DNA from: Sminthopsis crassicaudata
Lineage: Eukaryota
Reading direction: 5' to 3'
Assembly: GCF_048593235.1 (NCBI RefSeq)
Contig: NC_133617.1
Location: 669,332,958-669,396,957, forward strand
Length of the DNA stretch: 64,000 nt
Part shown: in pieces, positions 13,248 to 50,710 of the stretch
How the letters are laid out: the number at the start of each line of letters is the position of its first letter
Numbering within the stretch: position 1 is the first letter of the stretch
The notes under the pieces: generated by a model
What the model saw: the letters and a program-made list of their open reading frames with translations, nothing else
Told to the model about the DNA's origin: nothing
Databases searched by the model: none
Position numbers and translations under genes: made by a program

Positions 13248-14462
<1,215 letters not shown>

Positions 14463-19260: not shown

Positions 19261-22200
19261 GAGTGCCAACTTGTGAGGTCTTTCCTGACCCTAGTCCCAG
19301 AGCCAAGATCCTTGTCCCCTGAAAAAGCCAATGTACTTACTTTATATACACTTTATAGCACTCATATGTGCTCAGGTTATTTATTCCCATTTTAATATAA
19401 ACCTGTGGAAGGCCAGGGCTGTTTATTCTCATCTTTGTATCCCTAGCACAGCACCTAGCACAGTACTGGACACATAGTGGACATTAAATACTTGCTGAAT
19501 GGACCTGGGAAATAAAGAAGAAGGCAAAGTCAAAATTGATTCTCATTCATGAGAGTAAAGGAAGGTGCCATGGAAGGGTCAATGGCAATGTGGGCTGGGA
19601 TTAGAAAGAGTTTACAGCTTGAGGAGGAAGTTGCTTACCATCTGTCAAACCAAGAAAGTCCATGCCTGGAAGTATCTAGAAGGAAGAATGTAAGAGGAGT
19701 CAAGAGTTGACGGAATGGGAATGAGTCTGCATTTCTTTTGTAAGACAAGGGCTCAAGAGACTTCCATTACCACAAACCCGGGAGGTAGGTAGTATATGTA
19801 TTATCCCCGTTTTAATGATGAAGGAATTGATGGACTGAGAAAAATGACTTGCCTGTGGTCACATAGTCAAGTTTTAAATGCTTGTTTCCTTACTTCTGTT
19901 TCAATGTTCTTTCCATTAATGTACAGTTATTTCTATAGCTCAAATTTATCCTCTCTATATCCCTGTGAGATATGTAGCATAAGAACCAATATCCCCATGT
20001 GACAAAAAAAGAGGAGAGGCCCAAAGGTATGCCATCTCTCTAGCAGACTTTTTTGTCTCCCTTCCCCTAACTCAGGGGAAAGAGTTATCTCATTGGGTCA
20101 GATTTAGAGTTGAAAGGGGCCTCAGGAACCTTTCATCTTTTCTTTTTTTTTCCAAAAAGGAAACTAAGACCTACAGTGAGGCTACTTAGAGAATCAGGAC
20201 TTAAACCTGTAAGAAATATTAGAAAATTCAGTTCTGTTACTTAAAACCAGAGTGATTTCAGAAAAGTCACTTGACTCTCAGATTTTTTTCCCTTAGTAAA
20301 ATGAGAGGATTGTGCTGGATGATTTCTGAGAAAGAATATTAGTTACAAGGGCTCAAAGAATAATAAATTTAGATGTGAAAGGAGCATCAGAGATCATCTA
20401 GTTCACCTCCTTATTCTACAAATGAGGAAACTGAGGTCCAATGAAGTCAAGTAATTTGTACAAGATCTTGTATCGAACAAAGACCTGAGACCCAAATTCA
20501 GGGCTTCTGTCTCTTAGCTGTTTAGCATATCTCTTAAGTCCTAGGGCTTAGGTTTTCCAGAGTCTGGCCAAAGGAAGCGAATGTGAAATCAAGGCTTTCT
20601 TATTCTTAAGGACCCCAAATTTATTTAGAAAGTGAATGGAAAGATAAGACTCTTTCAACCCTGGAAGAAACTGAGAAGTAAGCTATTTTGGCACTCCAGC
20701 CTGGCAATGGGAGGGGCCCTTGGTCTAAGGCTACATTTTGCCTTTTCATCCCTCTTCGAGGATGGCATCCACGGAAACCACCACCCCATTCCTCCCAAAA
20801 GAAACAAAAGCCAAGAGAGCTACAATTCACCCCATCATTCATAGGTTCCCATTCAAAGAGAGGCATGTAAGCAGGAAACTGTCTTCTCAACCCAAACCTC
20901 TCATCCTCTTCCAGGGCAAATTCAGAGCCAGGGAGACAATCAAAGGGCAGGCCTTCCAAAACCTGGCAGGAAGCTCTGGGCCTGGGCTTGGTCCAAAATC
21001 CTTTGCAGAAGAACCTCCTTAGGCCCAGTGGTTGGGACAGTGGAATGGGACTGAGACTTTCTTTTTCATTAGCAAATAGGAAATGTTTCCAACTTCTGCA
21101 ACATCTCAGCCCTCAGGTGGCTTTATTACCATCCCGAAAAGTACCAGCATTCCTGGGGGCAAAGGGGATTCCAACTGAAGACTCCTGCCTGGGCCATGGG
21201 TGGAGTGGCTGACTTCTTCAGCACTGACCACAGACAGACACAGCTTCCAGAAGGGAAGGAAAGGGAATTTGTGTAATACCAATGCTCCCAGGGGCCTGAA
21301 GACCCAGGGACAGGAGCAACCTCCCCAGGTGCAACTAACTCATTAAAAGATCAGTAGCAGCTTAGTGCTGAGGGATCTCAGGCAGAGCCCTAACTAAGTA
21401 GTATTCCCTATGCACATCAACACCAGGAGCAGTCTTTCCAGCATACACATACACTTCCCATAGTCCTAATAGGCTCAGGTAGCAATTTGAAAACTCCTGG
21501 TAGATTATCTTATTCCCAGAAGCAGCAATTGTCACCTCTTTGTTTAGAAACATTCCTTTAGGCTCAAGAAGCATGAAGAAGAACCGTGGTAGTGACACCC
21601 CACCCCACCCCCACCCCCATTAAACCACAAACAATCTTTTTTTCCTTCACAGGACCTTAGCCCTTTATTGGATCTGAATTTGGAGGTGGAAAAAGGGAAG
21701 GTTTGGGGTCTTGGGACTTGGCTTGTGAAGGGTGAAAAGGAAGGAGTCTTGGGTTTGCACGGGGTGTTTTGTCTGCCTGACCTCTGAGCTGAGGGTCATC
21801 CCATACAGGCTCTCCTACACCAGCATTTTCTCACTGTAGCTGATTTGGAGAGGATCCTGCCTTTCCAGAAGCCTGGACTATCACAACAGACTTCATTCCA
21901 AAGGAACTAGACACTTCAAGGTGCCTAAGGCCTTTCAATTAGACCTGTATTTTCCCACAGCCTCGAGAAGAGAAGGGAATGGGCTTGAGGTGTGAACATG
22001 TGGGAGGGCACAGAGATAGGGGCCAAAAATAGATCAGAACCAGTGAAAGGATCAAAAGAATCCTAGAAGGTATAAACTGGGAGATTAAAAAAGCCCAGAT
22101 TTTGAGCTGGATAGGACCTTCAAACCCCTATACTGCACACATGGGAAAACTGAGGCTCAGAAAAAGGAAGTTACTTACTTGCCCAAGGTCACAGAGGCAC

Positions 22201-22519
22201 AACTGGGAGGTTTGGTAGACTGGGGAGAACTCCCTGGGATAAGGAAAACTCAAGAGAGACAGTGGATGCTCTGTAGGGCTTGGTGAGAAATTGGGGGAGG
22301 GGCTGGTTCAGAAAACCTACACGAGAAGTAAATGAGGAAAAGCCTGGCCCGCGTTGTTTTGTTATGCTTTGGTTTTGAGGGGGTGTGACCTTGATGAATA
22401 TATGGAGTACTGAGAGAAGAAACCTAAGAAATAGAGGGCCCCAAGACTGAGGCACAGGGAATAAGGCAGGAAGCTGGGAGAGCTGGACTGTACTAATAGA
22501 GCAGGTTAGAGAATGGCAA

Positions 22520-23100
22520 GGATGGGGATGAAGATAGAGATGGGGTGGGGATGGAGATGGGAGTGGGGGTGGGGATGGAGATGAGAAGATGGGGGTGGGG
22601 GTGAGGATAGAGATGGGGTGGGGATGGAGATGGGGGTGGGGATGGAGATGAGAAGATGGGGGTGGGGATGAGGATAGAGATGGGGTGGGGATGGAGATGG
22701 GGGTGGGGATGGAGATGAGAAGATGGGGGTGGGGATGAGGATAGAGATGGGGTGGGGATGGAGATGAGAAGATGGGGGTGGGGGTGAGGATAGAGATGGG
22801 GTGGGGATGGAGATGGGGGTGGGGATGAGGATAGAATAGAGGTAGGGAAGAGGGCTGGAGATGGGGGGTGGGGATGAAGATAAGAGTAGAGGTGGGGAAG
22901 ACGATTGGAGAGGGGGGTGGGGATGGGGTAAGAATGGGGTGGGAATGAGGAAGATAGAGACGAGGATGGGGATGGAGTAGGGGAAGAGGATGGGAGTGTG
23001 GTGGGGATGAAAATGAGAGAATAGGGATAAAGATGAGGGTGGGGGTGGGGATGAAGACGGGGATAGGAATGGGGATGAAGAAGATAAAAAGAACGAAGCC
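22520..23100 (+). repeat. G-rich degenerate tandem repeat (GGGGTGGGGAT(G)GAGAT units; ~67-bp higher-order unit)
   Basis: Visible periodicity of G4-5 runs. Confidence 0.9.
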
Positions 23101-23149
23101 AGGGGAGTCTGGGGCAGTGGAACAGTAAAATATGTTTAAGTGTGTATGA

Positions 23150-24500
23150 TCGGAGAGTCCCAGAGCTTCTAAGTATGGGGTCAGCAAGATCTCGGTCCTG
23201 GGGCACCTGGTACGTATGAGAACGGTGGGATACGGTGGATAAAGAAGGGGGTGGGAGGGGCAGGGAACCTGGGGGTCGTGGGGGTTTCGGGCGGCTGGGG
23301 CGGAAGGCCCGAAAAGATGTAAGAATGGGAAAATTCTGGGTGGGGAGCTATGACTGTGGAGAGACTTATGAAAGGGAGGGTGGTGGGTGCAAGGGGTAGC
23401 TTGGGTCGGGAAAGGGAGGGGAGGGCAGGGCAGGAGAGGGCGGGAGGGGGAGGATTGGAGTGGGGGAGGGGCTCCGAGGAGCCCCCCAGCCCCGCCCCCT
23501 CGGCGCTGCCTCCGGCCCGGCCCGGCAGACTGAGCCGCCGACGCCGCCGCCGACGCCGCCATGGCCAGGCCCCGGGCCCAGCGCCCCCTCTGGACGACCC
23601 GGGCCGGCTCGGCCCCGCGGGCCCAACACCTACCGGCCGCCGCCGCGGGGACCCGGGACCAGCCTCTGCGCCGCCTCCGCCGCTCCAACATGGCCGCCCC
23701 GCTGAGGGCCGGAAGTGCAGCTCCACTTCCGCTTCCGGCCCCCCCCCTCCTCAGAGCCCCCCTCCCAGACTGGGGACCCCCGGCCCCTCCCCTACCCCCA
23801 GGGTCTCCGCCCCCTAGGGTCTCCCGCGCCCCCACGTGGCGGTTGCTGGTCCTATTTTAGCTCTAGTCCAGTTCAACTAGACTTTGGGGAGACCACAGCC
23901 CTGCCCTCAGGGAGCCTCCAGTTTGGGGGAAAAACCCAGGCCTACCTTTCGGGAGCCTCCAGATTGGGAGAGAAACTCCGCTCTAAGGGCTGGAAGGTCT
24001 CGATCTGAGGAGGGGATTGAAGCCCGCCCTCAGGGAGCCTTTATGTGGGGGGGAATTACAGCTCCCCGCTGGGAGCTCTGGGGGCAGGAGAGGAAGCTCC
24101 TACCCTAATCCTTTTAAGACCGTCTGTCGGAGGGACACTCCCCTGGCCTAACTCCCGAGGACGACGTTGGGCGCAGTAGCGCCCTCATGACCCCGACAGC
24201 GCGGACCTCGAGCCCTCACGTGGCGCGAGGACACAGCAATCGAAGCACGTGTGGCTCGGATGGCCTCCCCCTATTATCTTTTTCCCCCTGAGTTTTCTTA
24301 ACCCCTCCCTCTGACCGCTCAAGTCTCCTTGCCAGAAAATCGCCCACAACAGCTCTGGTTGTCCCCCAGGCGCTGTACTGAACCCTTTTCTCCGAGACCC
24401 TTTTCCTGGCCATTGCATCAGCCGCCTTCCACGAGTTCTCGTTCTCGCGCATTCTTTGTGCACGTGACTTCTTCTACAAGCTAATACTCTGAGTTCCAAT
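23150..24500. promoter_or_regulatory. CpG-island promoter of CCDC71 (ETS CCGGAAGT/CACTTCCGCTTCCGG, YY1-like AACATGGC, four CACGTG E-boxes)
   Basis: High GC/CpG density; motifs read directly. Confidence 0.8.
23634..23730 (-). other. CCDC71: CCDC71 5' exon 1 (TSS approximate)
   Basis: CCG|GTAGGT donor inside a CpG island, next to ETS and YY1 motifs. Confidence 0.55.
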
Positions 24501-41110: not shown

Positions 41111-41385
41111 TTAGTGACTTGTTCTCAGTCTGGGAACCCTAGCAACCTGGCTGGGGGTTCCTGCAAGCTTGACATGACCTGGAAGAAGCCCAGGCTTTGG
41201 GGCATGTTGAGGAAGCATTGCTCCTGTGGTTTCTTTGGTCTCTCCCTGATTCAGTCCCCGGAAATGGTTACGTAGCTCTCGAACACTGATGCCAGACCGA
41301 ACGATGGTATCAAATTTACGGAATTTGCTTGGAGTGGTCAAGGGTTGAGGCATTGTGCTCAGGGGTTTGTGCTCCATAGGACCAC
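41111..41385 (-). CDS. Unnamed 201-aa gene, last coding exon (…PSKFRKFDTIVRSGISVRELRNHF…RTSH*)
   Basis: CTTCCTTAG acceptor, phase 1 in frame, open to TAA. Confidence 0.7.
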
Positions 41386-41693
41386 CTAAGGAAGCAGGAG
41401 ATGGACAGGTTAGATTTATTAGTACTTACTCACTGCCACTTCTACCCCACCAACCCAAAATTTATATGAGAAAGAAATATTAGTTCAAGGTACCATGGAA
41501 AACCCTGAGCTAGGAGTCATATCTCTGCAACTTGGGAAATTATTGTTTGGGTCCCAGTGTCCCCTCCCAACCATATTGGATTCCATGCCCTCTAAAATTT
41601 CTGACAATTGATGTTCTAGGAAATGATGCACTGCTGGATTTCAATCTAAAATTCCTGGTCCATCTTAATGTGTTCCTGGATCCAGGATCTCAC

Positions 41694-41826
41694 CTGGTGC
41701 TGATGCCTGACTACTGTTTAGAGCCTCCATGTCTCTGTCTCCATCTCTATCTAGGGCAGCAATGGTATCCAAAAGGAACTTCAGGCTCTCCTGCTCCCTT
41801 GGACTTAGACCCTCCAGGTCTGGTTC
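41694..41826 (-). CDS. Unnamed 201-aa gene, exon 3 (EPDLEGLSPREQESLKFLLDTIAALDRD; SARG/PROSER2-like motif)
   Basis: TTCTTCTCCTTGCAG acceptor, CAG|GTGAGA donor, 133 nt, phases match both neighbours. Confidence 0.75.
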
Positions 41827-42304
41827 CTGCAAGGAGAAGAAGGAATCCAACATGGATACAATGCAACAAAGAGCTGTTAACGATCCTACTGTCCAAAAGC
41901 ACTCTACTAGGACCTTGAAGGGTCAAAACAACATCAATATCAAGCCACTTCACAAATAGTAAATTATTTAACTTGAAAAGTCTACAAGCCAAGATTGATG
42001 TAAAAGAAGAATTGTAGTATAACTTTTTGTTAGTTAGATGATCGTGCCTCCAGTGCAGGCTGAGACTGAGATGTCACAAAGTATGGACCAATTCTTTGTG
42101 CTTGTGCTAATTTGGGCCTGACAATTAACATTAAGACAGGAGAGGTTCTCCCCCAGTCAGCACTACATCATATGGTTACACTAAATGGAGAAATTTTAAA
42201 TTTACCTTGACAGTATACTTTCCAGGTTGTACCCATAAATACATGCACTGCCAGAGCTAGCTCCCTATTTGGAAGGCTGAAGACATGTTACATAATTATA
42301 TTAT

Positions 42305-43020
42305 ACTTTGGAACTATTTTCAAAGGGCTATAAAACTGTGCGTACCTTTTGATCCAGTAATGTCACTACTAGGTGTGTATCCCAAAGAGATCATAAAAGA
42401 GGGAAAAAGACTCACATGTTTGTAGCGGCCCTTTTGTAGTGTCAAGGAATTAAAAATGAATTGATGCCCATCAGTTGGGGAATGGCTGAATAAGTTATGG
42501 TATAAGAATACAATGGAATATTATTGTTCTATGAAAAATAATCAGCAAGATGATTTCAGGAAGGTCTGGAGAGACATGAACTGATGCTGAGTGAAGTGAG
42601 CAGAACTAAGGGAACATTGTATACAGTAACAGCAACATGGTGTAATGATTCACTATGATTACTTAACTCTTCTCAGCAATACAATGATCCAAGACAAGTC
42701 CAATAGACGTCGGTGAAAAATGACATCTGCATTCAGAAAGAGAACTATGGAGACTGAATGTGGATGGAAGCATACTTTTTTCATCTTTTTGTTTGTTTTT
42801 TCTTTCTTGTGGTTTTTCCCTTTTGTTCTGATTTTTCTTTCACATGACCAATGTGTAAATATATTTTAAATTATTATACATGTATAATCCATGTCAGAAT
42901 GCTTGCTGTTTTGAGGTGTAGAGGTAAGAAAGGAAGGGGAAAAAAATTGAAACTCAAAATCTTACCAAAAAAAAAATGAATTTTGAAAACAATTTTTACA
43001 TGTAATTGGAAAAAATAAAG
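42305..43020 (+). mobile_element. LINE-1 3' end in intron 2 of the unnamed gene
   Basis: Marsupial L1 3' consensus-like sequence, A-rich end. Confidence 0.8.
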
Positions 43021-43632
43021 TTATGTTACAGAGAAGGCACATTACACACATATGTCATGCAGCAAAATCTAAGTCCTGATTGAAGTCTTGAAGGAAGACT
43101 GGAGGAATCTGCAGAGTATTCATGGAACACGTAAAATTTTAGTTGGCTTTTAATAAGGTAACTTAGGAAGGGAGGTCTTTTAGATCTTAGGAAGAAGGGA
43201 AAATAGAAACAGAGGCTCAAAGATGGGATAAAATGGCAAATTCAGGGATCAGTAAAAAGTCAAAGGTCATAAGGAACAATAGATCCCAAAGGCATCTCAG
43301 GGAAAGTCAGATAGAAGTAACAGTGTTGGCCACAGCATTTCCCACCTGGGGATTCTGGCATTCGAACTGCCCTCCCTCTTCATCTGTATCCATCCTCTTG
43401 TCTCAGCCGGAATGGTTGGACTTCAGGATCCTGGGAATCATAAGCTGGGTTGGTGGACAGCCTGGAAAGTTCAGATCTCCTTATCTCCTCCCCTCCCCCC
43501 TTCTGTTCCCTATTTTTTACCTGGACAAAGCTTATAGTACTTTGACTCCTGTTGCAGCAAGGGATGTTCTAAGGAGCTTTCCAACTATAGCAATGCCAAC
43601 CTGTCCTAGAGGATACAGAAGGTGCCCATTAC

Positions 43633-43817
43633 CTGTTCAGCTTTCTGGCTATTCAGGAGACACTGGCCAGGCTCTGGCCGGATGCAGGATGCTGACCTGG
43701 GTCTTGCCCTCCAGTTGATGGATGCTTCTGTTCCTGCCCAGGATGCACCCCCTTGCACTAGACACCTGTCCTGGCCAAAGGTTAGCATGGGCAAGGGAGG
43801 GGCAGGCAGGTGATGTC
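43633..43817 (-). CDS. Unnamed 201-aa gene, exon 2 (HHLPAPPLPMLTFGQ...INWRARPRSASC...QKAEQ)
   Basis: TTGTTTACACAG acceptor, CAG|GTAATG donor, 185 nt open. Confidence 0.7.
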
Positions 43818-44657
43818 CTGTGTAAACAAGAGCTACTTCCCGGTGGTGACTAGTCGGGCAGCTGTGTCAACACTAACGCTTCTATGGAGAGAGGCTCCCC
43901 AACAGGAAAAAACCGAGCCCTTAGTCACCTTGTCTCCACCCACCCCTCCCCCAGGTCCTGATTAGATACACTTTCCCTTCTTCCCGTGCAGGGGTATCCC
44001 AGGTAGCTCGAGCCATCCCTGCTGGAGACATTGAGATGACCCATTCTGGGACAAATGTGAGAGGCAAAAACTAAGCCAGTCACTCCTCATCCCCCTTCAA
44101 ACCCCTTTGGCTTATCCAACAAAGGTCTTCATCCGCTCCGCCCTCCAGCCAAATTGGCCACTATCTACATCGACCACTAGACCTGCCATCTCTGATCTCC
44201 ACGTTTTTGACTGGGCCATGGCCTTTATCTGGAGAATCCTCAGTTTCCTTCAAGGTTCGGTTTAAGGGTCATCCCACGCATGAAGTCTTTCCAGATTTTT
44301 CCAGGTGATTAGCCCAGATTTCTCTCCTCCTTAATTATCTTGCCTTTACTTGTAGTAAATGTGGTGTTATAGCCTCCAGCTCAGTTAGGAACTTACATTC
44401 CTCTGGCACCTGGCTGAGTGTCTCATCCTTAGCAGACACTTCATAAATGTTTGTTGAACTGGATTTTAATTTGGTTAGAACCCACGGGAGGGTAGAACTG
44501 AGCTGGGGGCAGGAGATAGGACAGAGATTAGGTTAGAATTCTAAAAGTCATAACCATGATATATATGCACGTTTTACAAGTGTTATTTCATCTCGCCTCT
44601 CAACCCCTCCCCCAAAACACCCCCCCTCAAAAAAAAAACTCCAGACACTGGTTACTA

Positions 44658-44796
44658 NNNNNNNNNNNNNNNNNNNNNNNNNNNNNNNNNNNNNNNNNNN
44701 NNNNNNNNNNNNNNNNNNNNNNNNNNNNNNNNNNNNNNNNNNNNNNNNNNNNNNNNNNNNNNNNNNNNNNNNNNNNNNNNNNNNNNNNNNNNNNNN
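44658..44796. other. Assembly gap (139 N)
   Basis: N run. Confidence 1.
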
Positions 44797-45338
44797 GTTG
44801 AAGAAGTTGAGGTGCGAAGAAATTGTGCCAAGTCACCCAGTTACCAAGCGTCTGAGGCAGGAGATGGACCCCTCCCCCACGCCTTTTCAATAATGCAAAA
44901 TCCAGTCATCTGACTATTCCGCAATATTGTCCACGAAGGATCTTAAATGATCATAATTTAGTGTAAAAAGAAAGGCCCTCGGGGTCATCTGGTGCGACCC
45001 TACGGTTCTGTAGATTGCTTGAAGTCGCGCAGTTAGCAATCAGCGGGACTTCCCGGGGATTAGCAGGCTCGAGGCCAGAGATTACATGGCTATAGGGGCA
45101 GACTTAAAGGTCAGTGAATCTAAAGACCCAGAGGAATAAGGCTGGGTTGGAGTTAGGGCTTTAAGGGCCTGGGGGGGAGGGGAGTGCCCAAACAACCTGG
45201 AGTCGCGAGGAGAGTTAGGAGAGTGTGGAGAGGGAGGGGTGGGGGTTGGGAGAAGCTTCCTCTAGGAGGGGGAGGAGTCAGCTGTAGTTCTTGCCCCGCC
45301 CCCAAGTCGCACTGGAGGAACTGGCCAGAGCCGCTCAC

Positions 45339-45351
45339 CAGGGGGCGCCAT
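45339..45351 (-). CDS. Unnamed 201-aa gene, exon 1 coding part (MAPP)
   Basis: ATGGCG followed by CTG|GTGAGC donor; phase 1 joins exon 2 in frame. Confidence 0.6.
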
Positions 45352-45885: not shown

Positions 45886-46273
45886 ATGAGCGCGGAGGAG
45901 CTGGATGCTTGCTCGGGGGACCCAGACCCGAGCCGGCCCCCCGGCCCCCCGGCGGTGGCTGCAGGCGCAGAGCAGGATGGGAAGGCAGAGAGCCTCGAGG
46001 CCCCGAGGAGGACTCCTTCACCCTCGGGGAGCCCGGGCCGGGAGGAGCCCGGGAAGCCCCTGGGCCCCCGTCCCGCTGGAGGCCCGGGAGCTGAGGGTCG
46101 GGACTCTCCTGGCTCCCCTGAACATCCCCTCCCCGTGAGAACCAAAAAACTGGTCCTTCACATGGACATAAACAACACCATCTTCGTGTCTGACAGCGCC
46201 ACGGGGGAGGGGCCCAAAGCCGCCCTCAGCTCCTACTTGAGCTCCGTGTGTTGGGGGCATTTCAACCAGGAGG
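45886..46273 (+). CDS. Uncharacterised HAD-superfamily protein (418 aa), exon 1 (low-complexity N-terminus, motif I LVLHMDINNTI)
   Basis: GGCATGA start, GAGG|GTAAGA donor, 388 nt. Confidence 0.88.
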
Positions 46274-47697
46274 GTAAGAAGCATCCCGGGCTCCGCACCG
46301 GTGCCAGGGGCCCAGTGGTCTTAGGCGGCCTCCAGTTACCCCCGAGGGTGAGGGAGGGGGCCGAGGAAGGAGAGGCGCGGGTGGTCTGGAAGGAAATGCT
46401 GAGATGTGACCTAGGCTCAAACCGTAGAACTTCGCCGAGCTTCAGGTTCTGTTTCTGTAAAGGGGATTTTTAACACAGGGTTTTGTAATGCTCATGTGCC
46501 CTTTTTATCCTTTCTTCTTCCTTGATGGTGCAAGTCTAAAGTGTCCTAACCCCCTCCCCACCCCCGGTTTCTCTGGAGACACTCTCCCTCTTCCCTGGAG
46601 CTGGGTGGAGCCCGTGGAAGATTCTGGGTAGAAGTGGTCAGTGGGTCACTCCCTGTGGTCTTGAGCACGTTGCTGTGCTGTGACTCAAGCAGTTGTTCTG
46701 GAAACTGGAGGGTTCATAGCGTTATGGATTAATTGGTTGCAGGGATCTGGGAAAGAAAGTCATCTTACTCCACCACAAAGGAGTCAAGTAGGCGAGGGGC
46801 CGAGCCCAAAGTCCCGCCGGGAGGGACAGTAGTAACTATCTAGTTACTAGGGAACTCGAACTAGGCAGTCTTACTGACTGGCCTTTTCTCCACTTCCTGT
46901 GCCACTTCCTCAGATTCCTCAGTTAAGAGCTCTAGGGACTTTGGGCAGATCCCTACTTTAGTGAACCTCAGTTTGTCACCTCTGTCTGGAAGGCTGATAA
47001 CAACCACTACTTAGGTCACTGGGCTGTTGTGCAGAAATCATTTTGTATAAAGGCAATTGCTGATGCAGTGGTTAGAGCCCTGGGCCTGAAGTCAGGAAGA
47101 CCAGAGTTCAAATCAGCCTCAGACACTATTTGACTCTGAGCAAATCATTTTGCTTCTGTCTGCCTCGGTTTCCTCTCTACAAATGGAGATAATTATAGTA
47201 TCCACCTTTTGGGGTTGTTAGGATCAAATGAGATAATATTTCTAAAGTGCTTCACAAACCCTAAAGAACCATAGAAATACAAACTATCATTCCAAAGTGA
47301 CATAGAAATGGCTGTTATTATTCCCCTCTCAAAATAAATGGCCCTGGAAAAATCACTTAAACTCCTAATATTCTGTGCAACCCTTTTAAATTTTGAAGAT
47401 GATTGATAAAGGGAGTTTCCTTGCCTGAAATTCTCTACATGGATGAAATCACAAATTTATGTAGGAAAAAAAATCTGTCTTCATCTCAGTTTTATTTTCT
47501 GGGAAATGAAGGACTTGCAGTAGATAGATAAATCTAGGAACGCACTTCTGATTACTGACTGATCACTGGGTTTGGAGGGCTAGCCACCATTGAGCTCCAT
47601 GTCTGAGGGGGGTTAGAGAAATCCCCTCCATGATTTTTGGCCACATTCCATGTCTCATCTACTACATACCCCAACTCTGGATTCCTTTCTCTTTCAG

Positions 47698-48083
47698 GTA
47701 AGTGGCAGTGGCTGAGTGAGCTCCCTTCATTGCTGCCCCCTACCCCTGATGCCAGCAGCTTCTCCTCAATTTTTGGCCGGCACACCAAGTTTATATCGAG
47801 TACGCTGGGCCACCCCTTCCAGTCACTCTTCTCCTCCTACTTGCAGCTGTTGGAGTGGCCTGGCCAGCCGAACTCAGTTTTCTCTGTCCTAGGGGAGGAT
47901 GGCCGTCATTACCACCGGGTGTTGCCAGCCTTTTTCAAATTACTGGCTGGTCTTTCTCAGCAGGGCCGCCGCTTTGCCATCATTTTCCGCACCTTTGGCA
48001 AAGACTTGACCTCACTACTTCAGACCACACACAGTGCCCTTCAAGGCCAGCACCCGCAGTTCTCAGCCTTGAAAGAGGTGATG
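47698..48083 (+). CDS. HAD-like protein exon 2 (GKWQWLSELPSL...motif II AIIFRTFG...)
   Basis: TTTCTCTTTCAG acceptor, ATG|GTGAGC donor, 386 nt open. Confidence 0.9.
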
Positions 48084-48251
48084 GTGAGCAATTCTCTTAA
48101 GGGAAACCAGAGTAGGAGCTCCTCTGGAGAGATTCAGCAGTCTAGTGACTGAAGAGCAGCCATTCTGTCTTAGAACTGGGGGGAAGGGAAGCAGGGGAGA
48201 TGGGTAACACTTGGGATGTGGGTGGGCCTCAACCCCTCCCTGTCCCTGCAG

Positions 48252-48412
48252 CTCCCTGTGGACCTGCGACCTGGAAAGATCCGCTGCAGTTCAAATAAGG
48301 TGATGGTCAGTCGAGGGAAAGAATCTGTGTCCAGTTGGCCAGATGCAAGAGTTGTGTATGACTACTTCAGTGCCATGGAAGGCCTGGGGGGCTTTCAGGA
48401 CCACTTTGCTTG
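48252..48412 (+). CDS. HAD-like protein exon 3 (LPVDLRPGKIRCS...GLGGFQDHFAW)
   Basis: CCCTGCAG acceptor, TG|GTAATA donor, 161 nt. Confidence 0.9.
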
Positions 48413-49101
48413 GTAATAACAATAACAACCCAAAAGAGTTATTTAGCACTATCCATTTATAAAGTACTTTGCTCACAAAGCCTTAGAAGATAGGCAGTGC
48501 AAGTATTATTTTCAGCGTTTTACAGATGAAAATAAAGACTCAAAGAGAAGTAATTTGTTCAGTGTAACAGAACCAGTAAGTGGTAGAGCCCAATTTCAAA
48601 CCTCTGTTCTGGGCCTTCCAGATTTCTTTCTGTCCCCCTCTCTTCCCCTCTCCTCCCCCCCGCCCCCCGTTTCCCCATCCCCCTGAAAGCTACCCAGGAC
48701 CAAAGAAGGTAACTAGTAATCCAGTTTCTCCATAGAGCCCATTTTGGGCATCCATCCCCTCCAAAATACCTTGTCAGTATTATCCCCTCCATGAATGAAG
48801 CCTTCCCTGAACTCTTGGTGCATTGTAATTACTTAATATTTATTGTCTTGGCTTTGTGATTTGATGTCAGCAACTCTCATGCTAGATAGTCCAAACAGTA
48901 AAAGCTTATTTTGTGTCCTGTGGCTGATGGTCCTACCTTTGGATTGGATTTGGGTGAACCCAAGTAGAACTTTCATACTAGCTCACCTATCACTGGCATA
49001 AAGCCAGTTGGGATAGTGCTAATCTGAAGCTCCACCTAAGGACATTATGAGTTCCATGATTATCTCCCCTACAATATCCTCCATTTTCCCTTTCTCTCTA
49101 G

Positions 49102-49234
49102 GTGGTCCAGGAACAATTTCTCCAGTCAAGGTGGCAAGCCACTGTGGGTTGATCCCCATGATCCTGAAGTCCAACACATCTGTTTTGATGATAACATTCG
49201 ACTACAGGATAGGGAGAGCATCATCCACCCTCAG
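49102..49234 (+). CDS. HAD-like protein exon 4 (motif III GGKPLW, motif IV ICFDDNI)
   Basis: TTTCTCTCTAG acceptor, CAG|GTACAA donor, 133 nt. Confidence 0.9.
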
Positions 49235-50521
49235 GTACAAATAGAATGGAATATTGGGAGGGAGAGGAGATAGCCTTTATCTCACAGAGACATAGGGGCT
49301 TGGAGGCAGGAAAACTTGAATTCAAACCCACACTTCAGCCTCACACTTAGCTATGTGATCCTGGGTCAAGTTGAGTCAATAAGTCAACCAAAATTCACTT
49401 TTTAAGAAATGTTATTTCATTTTCAATTCTGAATTTTCCCTTTACTCCCACTCTCCCACACATTGAGGAGGCAAGAAAAACAAAACTCATTACAAATATA
49501 TGTAACCAAAGCTTTTTTTTACTAAAGTCCTTACTGTAGGTCAGACACTACTAAGTGCTAGGGGCATAAAGAAAGGCAAAAAATATCCCTGCTTTTAAGT
49601 GGCTCATACTTTAATGGAGGAAGCAACATGGGAACAACTGTGTGTAGAAATCAGATGTATTAGACATAATATTAAAGGAAAGTCACTAAAATTAAGGAGA
49701 ATCAAGAAAAGCTTTTTGCAGAAGATGGGTCATGAGGCTGAAATAAGGAGAGTTGTAAGGATGGAGCCCAGTCATTTAAAATGCTAAAATTTATACACTT
49801 GAGATGGAGAATTATTTGTGAGGAACAGTAAGGAGATCACTTGTTTTTGTGTTTTAAATAGTATTTTATTTTTTTCTATTTACATATAAAATCAATTTTT
49901 AACATTTAAAAATTTTTTTCAGTTCCAATTTTTTTCTCTCCCTTGCCTTCCCCTTCCCTGGGACAATAAAGTCATTTGATGTATGTCTTATGTTTAATCA
50001 TGTAAAACATTAAAAAGATTAGTCACTGGGTTCAGAGTATGTAGAAAGAAGTAAAGATATAATAAGACTGAAGAGGTAGGAGAGGTCCAGGTTAGAAAGC
50101 TTTAAAAGCCAAGCAGTGGATTTTATATTTGATCCTGAAGGTAGTAAGTCACTAGTAGATCTCTCTCAGCTTGTTTCTTCATCCATAAAATGAGGGAATT
50201 AGGCTTTTTTGCTTTCCTTCCAGCTTGAATTCAGTGATCCTATGAATGGAATCAACCTGAGTTCTTAACCCATCATAAAATTTGGGCCTGCCAAAAGTTA
50301 GTTATGCTAGGATTAGGTTGATTTCCAAGCCTCTGTCAGCATTGGCCTCTTTGGAAGGAACTGAAGATTGGAGTCTTCCCTGGTGGCTAAAGAATGGATG
50401 TGATTTTGTGCAGCATATTGCTGGGCAGAGACCCTCTTCCGAGTCTCATACAGAGATACCACTATATTCTATCCCCACGAGGTCTGTTTATGTGTGTATC
50501 CTATTATATTCTCGGCTACAG

Positions 50522-50710
50522 GTGTTTATGGGACAGGGAGGACAAGAATACTGTACAGTCCCTACCTCTGAACTCTACGGCATCTGCCTAGTGCAAAACG
50601 ATCTCCTTCAGGCCATTGCCAATCCTGACTACTTCTTGATGACTGTGAGCCAGTGTGAGGATCGGTATGACCAATACTTGTCAAAGGTCCAGGCAGACAA
50701 TGGCTATTGA
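50522..50710 (+). CDS. HAD-like protein last exon (VFMGQGG...LVQNDLLQAIANPDYF...GY*)
   Basis: CTACAG acceptor, phase 0, open to TGA; total CDS 1257 nt. Confidence 0.88.
   Translation: MFMGQGGQEYCTVPTSELYGICLVQNDLLQAIANPDYFLMTVSQCEDRYDQYLSKVQADNGY

What the first reader, a model, noticed from the sequence alone, without database searches (positions are those of the whole stretch)
41111..45351. Hidden 4-exon, 201-aa gene with a SARG/PROSER2-like motif
Seen: four exons of 13+185+133+275 = 606 nt with strong splice sites, all phase-compatible, giving MAPPGHHL...INWRARPRSASC...EPDLEGLSPREQESLKFLLDTIAALDRD...KFRKFDTIVRSGISVRELRNHF...*. The ORF track shows only fragments. From memory, LSxxExExLxFLxxTIxxLD resembles the N-terminal motif of C1orf116/SARG and PROSER2, and VSVxExR resembles a later PROSER2 motif; RxRSxS is an Akt/14-3-3-type site. 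I know of no human coding gene at this position. Inference: an uncharacterised family member retained in marsupials (possibly orthologous to teleost zgc:158258-type genes; unverified recollection) and lost in humans.
Basis: partly seen in the sequence, partly recalled or inferred. Interest (0 to 1): 0.8.

Follow-up and report, generated by a model that had tools for sequence, protein, structure and literature searches.

The report
Small marsupial SARG/PROSER2-like gene, re-modelled

Summary

Only exons 3 (41694-41826) and 4 (41111-41385) are conserved coding sequence. Exon 2 is broken by a 1-nt and a 35-nt deletion in Tasmanian devil, and by two in-frame stops plus indels in koala. The exon-1 ATG is absent in koala.

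The conserved CDS is therefore 456 nt, 151 aa. Devil and koala share the same three exons and phases, and dN/dS is about 0.3.

Koala, tammar wallaby and devil annotations already carry the orthologues as "uncharacterized protein".

A marsupial profile finds about 35 unnamed proteins of 205-306 aa in squamates, frogs and a paddlefish (hhalign 98.7 %). Of 38 family members, 22 hit Pfam SARG (PF15385), and four frog members pass its threshold.

The predicted protein is mostly disordered, with two helical motifs.

So the SARG/PROSER2 link holds. The N-terminus and the Akt/14-3-3 site do not. Loss in placentals was not tested.

Verdict: a new member of a known family, of moderate interest.

The parts
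43346..43393 (-). Conserved first coding exon ('exon A'), 48 nt, 16 codons beginning MDTDEEGG, phase-0 donor CAG|gtggga.
   Evidence: ATG at 43393 with A at -3 and G at +4, and an in-frame TGA four codons upstream; the identical 48-nt exon with the same donor is the annotated start exon in devil (L001 10001-10048) and koala (L002 10001-10048).
43394..43430 (-). Probable 5'-UTR part of exon A, running up to a candidate acceptor (ttcccag|GATCC). Inferred only.
   Evidence: One search gives the upstream sequence; the tammar isoform X1 and the koala sequence extend the exon about 48 nt upstream of the ATG. In the window this stretch holds an in-frame stop, so it is non-coding here.
41694..41826 (-). 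It carries the N motif.
   Evidence: It is open only in the annotated frame in all three species. The splice sites are conserved.
41743..41817 (-). N motif, residues 20-44 (LEGLSPREQESLKFLLDTIAALDRD), a predicted amphipathic helix.
   Evidence: Pfam SARG profile positions 9-62; hhalign. AF2 helix 25-42 in the koala orthologue with pLDDT about 88; family-wide conservation.
41111..41385 (-). It starts with 2 nt of a split Gly codon.
   Evidence: The same split GGT Gly codon at a phase-1 intron is seen in squamate genes.
41261..41320 (-). Mid motif, residues 83-102 (RKFDTIVRSGISVRELRNHF), the most conserved element of the family.
   Evidence: D, T, I, S, G, V, E and L are invariant in 38 sequences from marsupials to paddlefish; predicted helix-turn-helix (90-95, 99-107), pLDDT about 70-75.
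41177..41203 (-). Degenerate remnant (APKPGLLPG) of the family's EALQKLGLL motif.
   Evidence: (columns about 330-345) aligns marsupial (A/S)(Q/S)KPGLLPG with EALQKLGLL. This is my own reading of the alignment. It was not picked up by Pfam.
43633..43817 (-). Not conserved as coding. It lies in a conserved non-coding block upstream of the start codon (possible promoter or 5' UTR).
   Evidence: frameshifting deletions in devil; two in-frame stops and indels in koala; the 400 nt upstream of the ATG are 83 % identical between window and koala, against 73-76 % for introns.
45339..45351 (-). No support as coding. It lies in the GC-rich divergent promoter shared with the + strand gene that starts at 45886.
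   Evidence: the ATG is present in devil but absent in koala. GC 0.61-0.69.
44658..44796 (.). Assembly gap (139 N), outside every exon of either model.
   Evidence: both flanks align collinearly to devil and koala. No attempt was made to fill it.

Best explanation
This is a genuine protein-coding gene on the minus strand with three coding exons: 43346-43393, 41694-41826 and 41111-41385. It encodes a 151-residue, largely disordered protein.

The protein is the marsupial member of an unnamed short subfamily (about 150-300 aa) of the SARG/PROSER2 family (Pfam PF15385). That subfamily is also present in squamates, frogs and a paddlefish.

The marsupial version is a trimmed form. It keeps the N-terminal amphipathic helix (LxGLSPxExExLxFLLxTIxxLD) and the nearly invariant RKFDTI[VM]RSG[IV]xVxELR helix-turn-helix. 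It has lost about 50 residues between them (the SKxKxIKSxSEE segment). Only a degenerate form of the EALQKLGLL motif remains.

Inferred mechanism, not shown: like its large relatives, it probably acts as a cytoplasmic adaptor whose short helical motifs fold on binding partner proteins. Human C1ORF116/SARG is reported to be a disordered putative autophagy receptor that binds GABARAPL2, thioredoxin and GCLC. PROSER2 is reported to bind STK25 and PDCD10. The marsupial protein lacks the aromatic residue at the position of SARG's reported N-terminal LIR (SSYDFL), so binding of LC3/GABARAP through that site is unlikely. The retained helices are the candidate binding modules.

For: Shown here:
- Exons 3 and 4 are 79-90 % identical to the annotated tammar, koala and devil proteins.
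- The three-exon structure, phases and splice sites are identical in devil and koala.
- The start exon is intact in the window, with a strong Kozak context and an upstream in-frame stop.
- Pairwise dN/dS is 0.29-0.31. Fisher p is 2e-5 (window vs koala) and 7e-6 (devil vs koala).
- CDS identity between window and koala is 87 %, against 73-76 % in introns. All CDS indels are in frame.
- A marsupial-only profile finds Pogona LOC110079944 at E 1.5e-5 against 5.8e9 sequences.
- A wider profile finds about 35 squamate, anuran and paddlefish proteins.
- hhalign of marsupials against non-marsupials gives probability 98.7 %, E 1.7e-16, over 91 columns covering both motifs.
- Squamate genes have the same three coding exons, with a phase-0 intron and then a phase-1 intron in a split Gly codon.
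- PF15385 is hit by 22 of 38 members. Four frog members score above the 27-bit cut-off (28.4-35.6 bits). Frog C-terminal halves separately match profile positions 284-370.
- ESM-Atlas: the top 13 named clusters are all PF15385.
- AF2: mean pLDDT 57.9, with a confident helix at 25-42 and helices at 90-95 and 99-107.
- A Logan contig carries an uninterrupted CDS of a frog-type member, presumably a spliced transcript, so the subfamily would be expressed somewhere.

From the literature: partner data for C1ORF116 (bioRxiv 10.1101/2025.02.09.636592) and for PROSER2 (PMC10913870).
Against: - There is no transcript evidence for any marsupial. Each marsupial protein is recorded on one genome contig only, with no Logan transcript.
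- The direct Pfam match of the marsupial proteins is below threshold. Devil alone scores (13.3 bits); koala, tammar and the window's exon pieces give nothing.
- The marsupial form has lost a conserved segment and has a degraded third motif. The devil copy carries an earlier stop (139 aa), which could be read as relaxation of constraint.
- Orthology to the squamate and frog genes rests on sequence and intron positions only. Synteny could not be checked.
- The mechanism is entirely by analogy. Which motifs of SARG or PROSER2 bind their partners is not known.
Confidence: 0.75

Rival explanations
1. The reader's four-exon, 201-aa product (exon 1 + exon 2 spliced directly to exon 3, skipping the MDTD exon) is the real protein, or an alternative one, in this species.
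For: The ORF is open in the window and all four exons have strong GT-AG sites. The exon-2 splice-site dinucleotides are kept in devil and koala. The exon-1 ATG and donor are kept in devil.
Against: The exon-2 frame is destroyed in devil (1-nt and 35-nt deletions) and in koala (two stops plus indels). The exon-1 ATG is absent in koala. All three annotated orthologues start at the MDTD exon, which is intact with a good Kozak context in the window. If exon 2 spliced to exon A instead, the exon-1 ORF would end in a stop and act only as a uORF. That last point is my own reading of the sequence.
Confidence: 0.07
2. The locus is a decaying relic, either a transcribed pseudogene or a non-coding RNA, and the open frame is left over from an ancestral longer gene.
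For: Marsupial proteins are half the length of the squamate and frog ones, lack the SKxKxIKSxSEE segment and have a degenerate EALQKLGLL motif. The devil copy has a premature TAG that removes the last 12-16 residues. No marsupial transcript contig was found.
Against: The frame is intact in four marsupial species of two orders. dN/dS is about 0.3 with bootstrap upper bounds of 0.50-0.77. Indels are in frame only, and splice sites and phases are conserved. The two motifs are nearly unchanged from marsupials to paddlefish.
Confidence: 0.1
3. The resemblance to SARG/PROSER2 is convergent similarity of short acidic amphipathic helices in disordered proteins, and the small family is unrelated to PF15385.
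For: The Pfam matches cover mainly about 50-100 N-terminal profile positions. Many members score below the gathering cut-off. Both families are low-complexity and disordered.
Against: Two separate, collinear segments of frog members match the SARG profile: positions about 10-100 and 284-370. Four members pass the curated cut-off. The language-model search independently ranks only PF15385 clusters in the top 13.
Confidence: 0.05

Closest known systems
Unnamed 'uncharacterized protein LOC...' family of squamates, anurans and paddlefish (e.g. Pogona vitticeps LOC110079944, Rhineura floridana LOC133380811, Polyodon spathula LOC121297867), and the marsupial models koala LOC144456625, tammar XP_072507478 and devil ACOB8E_006900
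   Same: They share the N motif and a near-identical RKFDTI[MV]RSG..V.ELR motif. They share the three-coding-exon layout with a phase-0 intron followed by a phase-1 intron in a split Gly codon. The marsupial models have the same head-to-head neighbour gene.
   Different: Marsupial proteins are 139-152 aa against 205-306 aa. They lack the SKxKxIKSxSEE segment and have only a degenerate EALQKLGLL motif. Synteny with the non-marsupial genes was not established.
SARG / C1orf116 (Pfam PF15385)
   Same: The N-terminal helix motif maps to the start of the SARG profile. Family members also match profile positions 284-370, which hold an EALxKLGL-type motif. Both are disordered with a few helical islands: here, and bioRxiv 10.1101/2025.02.09.636592 for the human protein.
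   Different: Human SARG has 601 aa (bait 1-601 in that preprint) against 151 aa here. The reported LIR SSYDFL has no aromatic counterpart here (EPDL; EDFL in squamates). The marsupial proteins do not reach the Pfam cut-off. The locus differs: here it lies between CCDC71 and KLHDC8B, whereas from my own knowledge human C1orf116 lies at 1q32.1 near KLHDC8A and LAMB3.
PROSER2 (C10orf47; Pfam PF15385)
   Same: ESM-Atlas ranks 2 and 3 are PROSER2 clusters (0.88 and 0.87). It belongs to the same Pfam family. It is a cytoplasmic protein that binds STK25 and PDCD10 (PMC10913870).
   Different: PROSER2 is about three times longer and Pro/Ser-rich. It was not retrieved by the profile search even though proteins up to 465 aa were eligible. 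No direct alignment to PROSER2 could be made here.

Membership tests
SARG/PROSER2 (Pfam PF15385) | Direct match of the protein to the PF15385 profile at or above the gathering score (27 bits) | tested here: not met
   The devil orthologue scores 13.3 bits, E 0.045, at profile positions 9-62. Koala, tammar and the window's exon pieces give no hit.
SARG/PROSER2 (Pfam PF15385) | Transitive membership: significant homology to proteins that themselves pass the PF15385 cut-off | tested here: met
   Marsupial against non-marsupial profiles: hhalign 98.7 %, E 1.7e-16. Frog members P0036, P0009, P0033 and P0021 score 35.6, 29.2, 28.8 and 28.4 bits. In all, 22 of 38 members hit at E <= 0.01.
SARG/PROSER2 (Pfam PF15385) | N-terminal amphipathic helix L-[ST]-x-E-E-x-E-x-L-x-[FY]-L-x-x-T-I-x-x-L-D | tested here: met
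   The window has LSPREQESLKFLLDTIAALD. It aligns to the start of the SARG profile. AF2 predicts a helix with pLDDT about 88.
SARG/PROSER2 (Pfam PF15385) | EALxKLGL(L) motif | tested here: inconclusive
   It is clear in squamate, frog and paddlefish members, and the frog C-terminal halves hit profile positions 284-370. In marsupials only (A/S)xKPGLLPG remains, and Pfam gives no hit for the koala C-terminal half.
SARG/PROSER2 (Pfam PF15385) | Long Pro/Ser-rich disordered body (about 435-600 aa) | tested here: not met
   The protein has 151 aa, and the family ranges from 139 to 306 aa.
SARG/PROSER2 (Pfam PF15385) | N-terminal LC3-interacting region (SSYDFL in human C1ORF116, per bioRxiv 10.1101/2025.02.09.636592) | tested here: not met
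   The residues just before the helix are QEPDLEGL in the window and EDEDFLSGL in squamates. Neither has an aromatic-x-x-[LIV] core at that place. The positional equivalence to SSYDFL rests on my memory of the human sequence.
Unnamed short SARG-like subfamily (squamates, anurans, paddlefish) | RKFDTI[MV]RSG[VI]xVxELR motif | tested here: met
   The window has RKFDTIVRSGISVRELR. The eight columns that are invariant in 38 sequences are all present.
Unnamed short SARG-like subfamily (squamates, anurans, paddlefish) | Three coding exons: a phase-0 intron before the N-motif exon, then a phase-1 intron in a split Gly codon | tested here: met
   Seen in the window, devil and koala and in Rhineura, Pseudonaja and Anolis sagrei. 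The paddlefish gene has one extra 27-nt exon.
Unnamed short SARG-like subfamily (squamates, anurans, paddlefish) | Central SKxKxIKSxSEE segment | tested here: not met
   It is absent from all four marsupial sequences, through an in-frame loss of about 50 residues.
Unnamed short SARG-like subfamily (squamates, anurans, paddlefish) | Shared genomic neighbourhood (orthology by synteny) | not testable with these tools
   The 10-kb flanks of four non-marsupial loci hold no called gene and give no tblastn hit to the window's neighbours.

The most novel reading that the evidence does not exclude
The gene is the marsupial survivor of a third, never-named vertebrate paralogue of SARG and PROSER2. It sits in the KLHDC8B-CCDC71-LAMB2 block, which is the paralogous counterpart of the KLHDC8A-C1orf116-LAMB3 block (human map positions from my own knowledge). 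On this reading it was lost in placentals and possibly in birds, turtles and teleosts. Its stripped-down 151-aa form would then mark the two helices as the minimal functional module of the whole family.
Probability: 0.45. Interest if true: 0.45.

Novelty: new member of a known kind. Interest (0 to 1): 0.35.

Why it matters
SARG/C1orf116 and PROSER2 are poorly understood disordered proteins. A recent preprint even states that C1ORF116 has no family members. A naturally minimised, selectively constrained relative that keeps only two short helices shows which parts of the family are likely to carry function, and it offers a small construct for binding studies. The case also has a practical lesson. 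The correct first exon is only 48 nt, and comparison with two other marsupials decided between gene models that looked equally good in one sequence. If loss in placentals is confirmed, it would add one lineage-specific gene loss at a well-mapped locus. Otherwise this is an ordinary uncharacterised gene that current annotation pipelines already predict in related species.

Tried and rejected
- Pfam on the three exon translations separately found nothing useful.
- ESM-Atlas on exon 4 alone gave only weak hits to assorted disordered proteins.
- phmmer of exon 4 against 1.84 billion representatives found only the marsupial cluster. A single-sequence search is too weak to carry a 20-residue motif across to reptiles.
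- Synteny outside marsupials: four loci (Rhineura, Polyodon, Pseudonaja, Anolis sagrei) have no neighbouring gene within 10 kb and no tblastn hit to the window's HAD-like, CCDC71 or KLHDC8B exons.
- The tammar isoform X1 N-terminal extension was considered as an alternative start. It was rejected because of stops in koala and in the window.
- The RxRSxS Akt/14-3-3 site was rejected because it lies in the non-conserved exon 2.
- LC3 binding through an N-terminal LIR, as proposed for human C1ORF116, was considered. It is judged unlikely for lack of the aromatic residue.
- Literature searches for PF15385 and for this interval in marsupials found nothing.
- I could not obtain SARG or PROSER2 sequences from a tool, so no tree or direct alignment with them was made.
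- The spliced 151-aa window protein has no reference form, so it was never submitted whole to a tool. The devil and koala orthologues stood in for it.
Full report
**1. The observation**

The finding lies on the minus strand.
- Exon 1 is 45339-45351 (13 nt, ATGGCGCCCCCTG|gtgagc).
- Exon 2 is 43633-43817 (185 nt).
- Exon 3 is 41694-41826 (133 nt).
- Exon 4 is 41111-41385 (275 nt including TAA).

The sum is 606 nt and 201 codons. Every intron is GT-AG with strong sites. The description is therefore accurate.

The DNA on both sides aligns collinearly, on the same strand, to the orthologous devil and koala loci. Nothing suggests a misjoin, and the gap has no bearing on any reading frame. I did not try to fill it.

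**2. Genomic setting**

Large ORFs identify the neighbours.
- A laminin-beta N-terminal exon lies at about 9.3 kb on the minus strand.
- CCDC71 is at 13248-14462 on the minus strand.
- A KLHDC8B kelch exon is at 60706-61110 on the plus strand.
- A plus-strand gene starts at 45886, head-to-head with the candidate across a GC-rich block (GC 0.61-0.69). Earlier notes of this scan describe that neighbour as a HAD-like protein and flag the head-to-head pair.

**3. Relatives of the product**

phmmer of the exon-4 translation against 1.84 billion representative proteins gave one cluster (E 3.9e-34, 79 % identity). It holds two RefSeq models of tammar wallaby, XP_072507478 (152 aa) and XP_072507469 (212 aa), both named "uncharacterized protein".

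A search with the longer model added koala LOC144456625 (152 aa) and Tasmanian devil ACOB8E_006900 (139 aa).

The window's exons 3 and 4 align to these over their whole length. The exon 3/4 junction is in the same place.

The non-coding DNA of the window is about 82-93 % identical to devil. The window therefore comes from a fairly close relative of the devil, not from the devil itself.

**4. The 5' end is wrong**

I fetched the devil (L001) and koala (L002) loci and mapped the proteins.

The window has this exon intact at 43346-43393.
- It encodes 16 codons beginning MDTDEEGG.
- The ATG has A at -3 and G at +4.
- An in-frame TGA lies four codons upstream.
- The donor is CAG|gtggga, in phase 0, which fits exon 3.

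Devil has a 1-nt and a 35-nt deletion. Koala has two in-frame stops plus a 1-nt deletion and a 4-nt insertion. The exon-1 ATG is present in devil but absent in koala.

The tammar X1 N-terminal extension is not conserved either. It has stops in koala and in the window.

The conserved CDS in the window is therefore 43346-43393 + 41694-41826 + 41111-41385. That is 456 nt and 151 residues.

They are better conserved between window and koala (83 %) than introns are (73-76 %). I read this as promoter or 5' UTR.

**5. Is it under selection?**

Devil and koala have the same three exons, the same phases and conserved splice sites. All length differences between the coding sequences are multiples of three.

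Nei-Gojobori dN/dS values:

| Pair | dN/dS | Fisher p (syn vs nonsyn) | Bootstrap upper bound |
|---|---|---|---|
| window-devil | 0.31 | 0.008 | 0.77 |
| window-koala | 0.30 | 2e-5 | 0.55 |
| devil-koala | 0.29 | 7e-6 | 0.50 |

CDS identity between window and koala is 87 %. Introns are 73-76 % identical and have many indels.

Exon 3 is open only in the annotated frame in all three species. Exon 4 has only the terminal stop in its frame, except in devil, where a TAG ends the protein 12-16 residues early.

This is the pattern of a constrained coding gene.

**6. A wider family**

A profile of the marsupial proteins found Pogona vitticeps LOC110079944 (266 aa, E 1.5e-5 for a database of 5.8e9 sequences).

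A profile that included it found about 35 further proteins of 205-306 aa. They come from squamates, anurans and one paddlefish. All are unnamed, and many carry a precomputed PF15385 label. No placental, monotreme, bird, turtle, crocodilian or teleost protein appeared. That search is limited to candidates sharing exact 5-mers and to 146-465 aa, so absence is not shown.

The alignment (A4) shows three motifs:
- an N motif, (E)DFLSGLxPEEKECLEYLLQTIxxLDxD;
- a mid motif, RKFDTI[MV]RSG[VI]xVxELR, with eight invariant columns in 38 sequences;
- a C motif, SPRDEALQKLGLLQ.

Marsupials keep the first two almost unchanged. They lack about 50 residues between them, including a SKxKxIKSxSEE segment. In place of the third motif they have only (A/S)xKPGLLPG.

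hhalign of marsupial against non-marsupial profiles gives probability 98.7 %, E 1.7e-16, over 91 columns spanning both motifs.

Three squamate genes have the same three coding exons: a phase-0 intron, then a phase-1 intron that splits a GGT Gly codon, exactly as in marsupials.

A 1246-nt Logan contig (SRR3901722) holds an uninterrupted CDS of a frog-type member. In a family whose genes have introns, I take this to be a spliced transcript.

**7. Link to SARG/PROSER2**

- Direct Pfam scans of the window's exon pieces and of the koala and tammar proteins give nothing.
- The devil protein hits PF15385 (SARG) at E 0.045, 13.3 bits, at profile positions 9-62. This is below the 27-bit cut-off.
- Across the family, 22 of 38 members hit PF15385 at E <= 0.01. 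Four frog members exceed the cut-off, at 28.4-35.6 bits.
- The frog C-terminal halves on their own match profile positions 284-370 at E 4e-4 to 5e-3. Two collinear segments therefore agree with the SARG model.
- Independently, the ESM-Atlas feature search with the koala protein ranks only PF15385 clusters in its first 13 named hits. The best is a 300-aa "SARG domain-containing" cluster (0.90, 187 shared features). PROSER2 clusters follow (0.88, 0.87).

I conclude that the gene belongs to the SARG/PROSER2 superfamily through a short, unnamed subfamily. The marsupial proteins themselves do not pass the curated Pfam test.

**8. Structure and likely mode of action**

AlphaFold2 on the koala orthologue with the family alignment gives mean pLDDT 57.9 and pTM 0.24. 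One confident helix covers residues 25-42, the N motif (pLDDT about 88). A helix-turn-helix covers 90-95 and 99-107, the mid motif (pLDDT about 70-75). The rest is predicted disordered.

This matches what a preprint reports for human C1ORF116: an intrinsically disordered protein with three conserved helical islands. It is described as a putative autophagy receptor with a best-scoring LIR, SSYDFL, that binds GABARAPL2, thioredoxin and GCLC (bioRxiv 10.1101/2025.02.09.636592).

PROSER2 is reported to be cytoplasmic and membrane-associated and to bind STK25 and PDCD10 (PMC10913870).

By analogy, I infer that the 151-aa protein is a small cytoplasmic adaptor whose two helices fold on binding partners. 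The residues preceding the N helix are QEPDLEGL in the window and EDEDFLSGL in squamates. Neither has an aromatic-x-x-[LIV] core, so the LIR proposed for SARG is not conserved here. Nothing in this paragraph beyond the fold prediction is shown for this protein.

**9. Evolution**

From my own knowledge of human map positions, not tested here:
- KLHDC8A, C1orf116 and LAMB3 lie together at 1q32.
- KLHDC8B, CCDC71 and LAMB2 lie together at 3p21.31.
- CCDC71L and LAMB1 lie at 7q22-q31.

A SARG-like gene next to KLHDC8B, CCDC71 and a laminin-beta gene is what one would expect of a paralogue from the vertebrate genome duplications. Together with the taxon list, this makes "third paralogue, lost in placentals" plausible. 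Neither the loss nor the separate-clade status was tested.

**10. Verdict**

The exons are there, and exons 3-4 are real coding exons. Exons 1-2 are not coding, and a 48-nt start exon was missed.

The SARG/PROSER2 kinship holds. The 201-aa product, the kinase/14-3-3 site and the "hidden" label do not. Placental loss remains open.

The gene is already predicted as an uncharacterised protein in three other marsupials. It is therefore a new member of a known kind, of moderate interest.

Noticed in passing
window 45886-50710 (+); L001 2660-7818 (-); L002 2329-7506 (-): The head-to-head neighbour (the HAD-like gene of earlier notes) is conserved in devil (416 aa), koala (419 aa) and tammar (414 aa) in the same divergent arrangement. 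It has no Pfam hit on record. Its exons are 62-96 % identical at protein level to the window's ORFs.
   Followed up: partly
L001 12210-12212 (devil orthologue): The devil copy has a TAG where the window, koala and tammar have CAG (Gln). This shortens the protein to 139 aa and removes the QVARVP(K/R)L tail. The last 12-16 residues therefore seem dispensable.
   Followed up: partly
window 43394-43793 (-): The 400 nt upstream of the start codon are 83 % identical between window and koala, against 73-76 % for the gene's introns. This is possibly a proximal promoter or 5' UTR.
   Followed up: partly
window 44161-44253 (-): A 30-codon ORF (begins MKETEDSPDK) resembles the stretch of devil L001 (9179-9250) that matches the upstream exon of the tammar isoform X1 model. 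It ends in a stop here. It may be a 5'-UTR exon of the gene. The correspondence rests on comparing by eye; tblastn of the tammar N-terminus against the window did not report it.
   Followed up: partly
window 22189-23835 (-): A 548-codon ORF is made largely of Pro/His/Ser-rich repeats (PHPHLHPHP-type), next to a very GC-rich stretch. It is probably a low-complexity tandem repeat near a CpG island rather than a gene.
   Followed up: no
window 53839-53987: A second assembly gap (149 N) lies between the HAD-like gene and KLHDC8B.
   Followed up: no
L007 292-1035 (Logan SRR3901722): A short contig with an uninterrupted 247-codon CDS of a frog-type family member, presumably a spliced transcript. If so, it is direct evidence that this unnamed subfamily is transcribed and spliced in at least one species.
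   Followed up: partly
literature (bioRxiv 10.1101/2025.02.09.636592): The preprint states that C1ORF116 has no family members. Pfam PF15385 groups it with PROSER2, and the short family described here hits the same model.
   Followed up: partly
L004 10001-12480 (paddlefish P0039): The paddlefish member has two EAL(Q/E)KLGLL motifs, the second at the very C-terminus, and one extra 27-nt coding exon. It may be closer to the ancestral layout.
   Followed up: no
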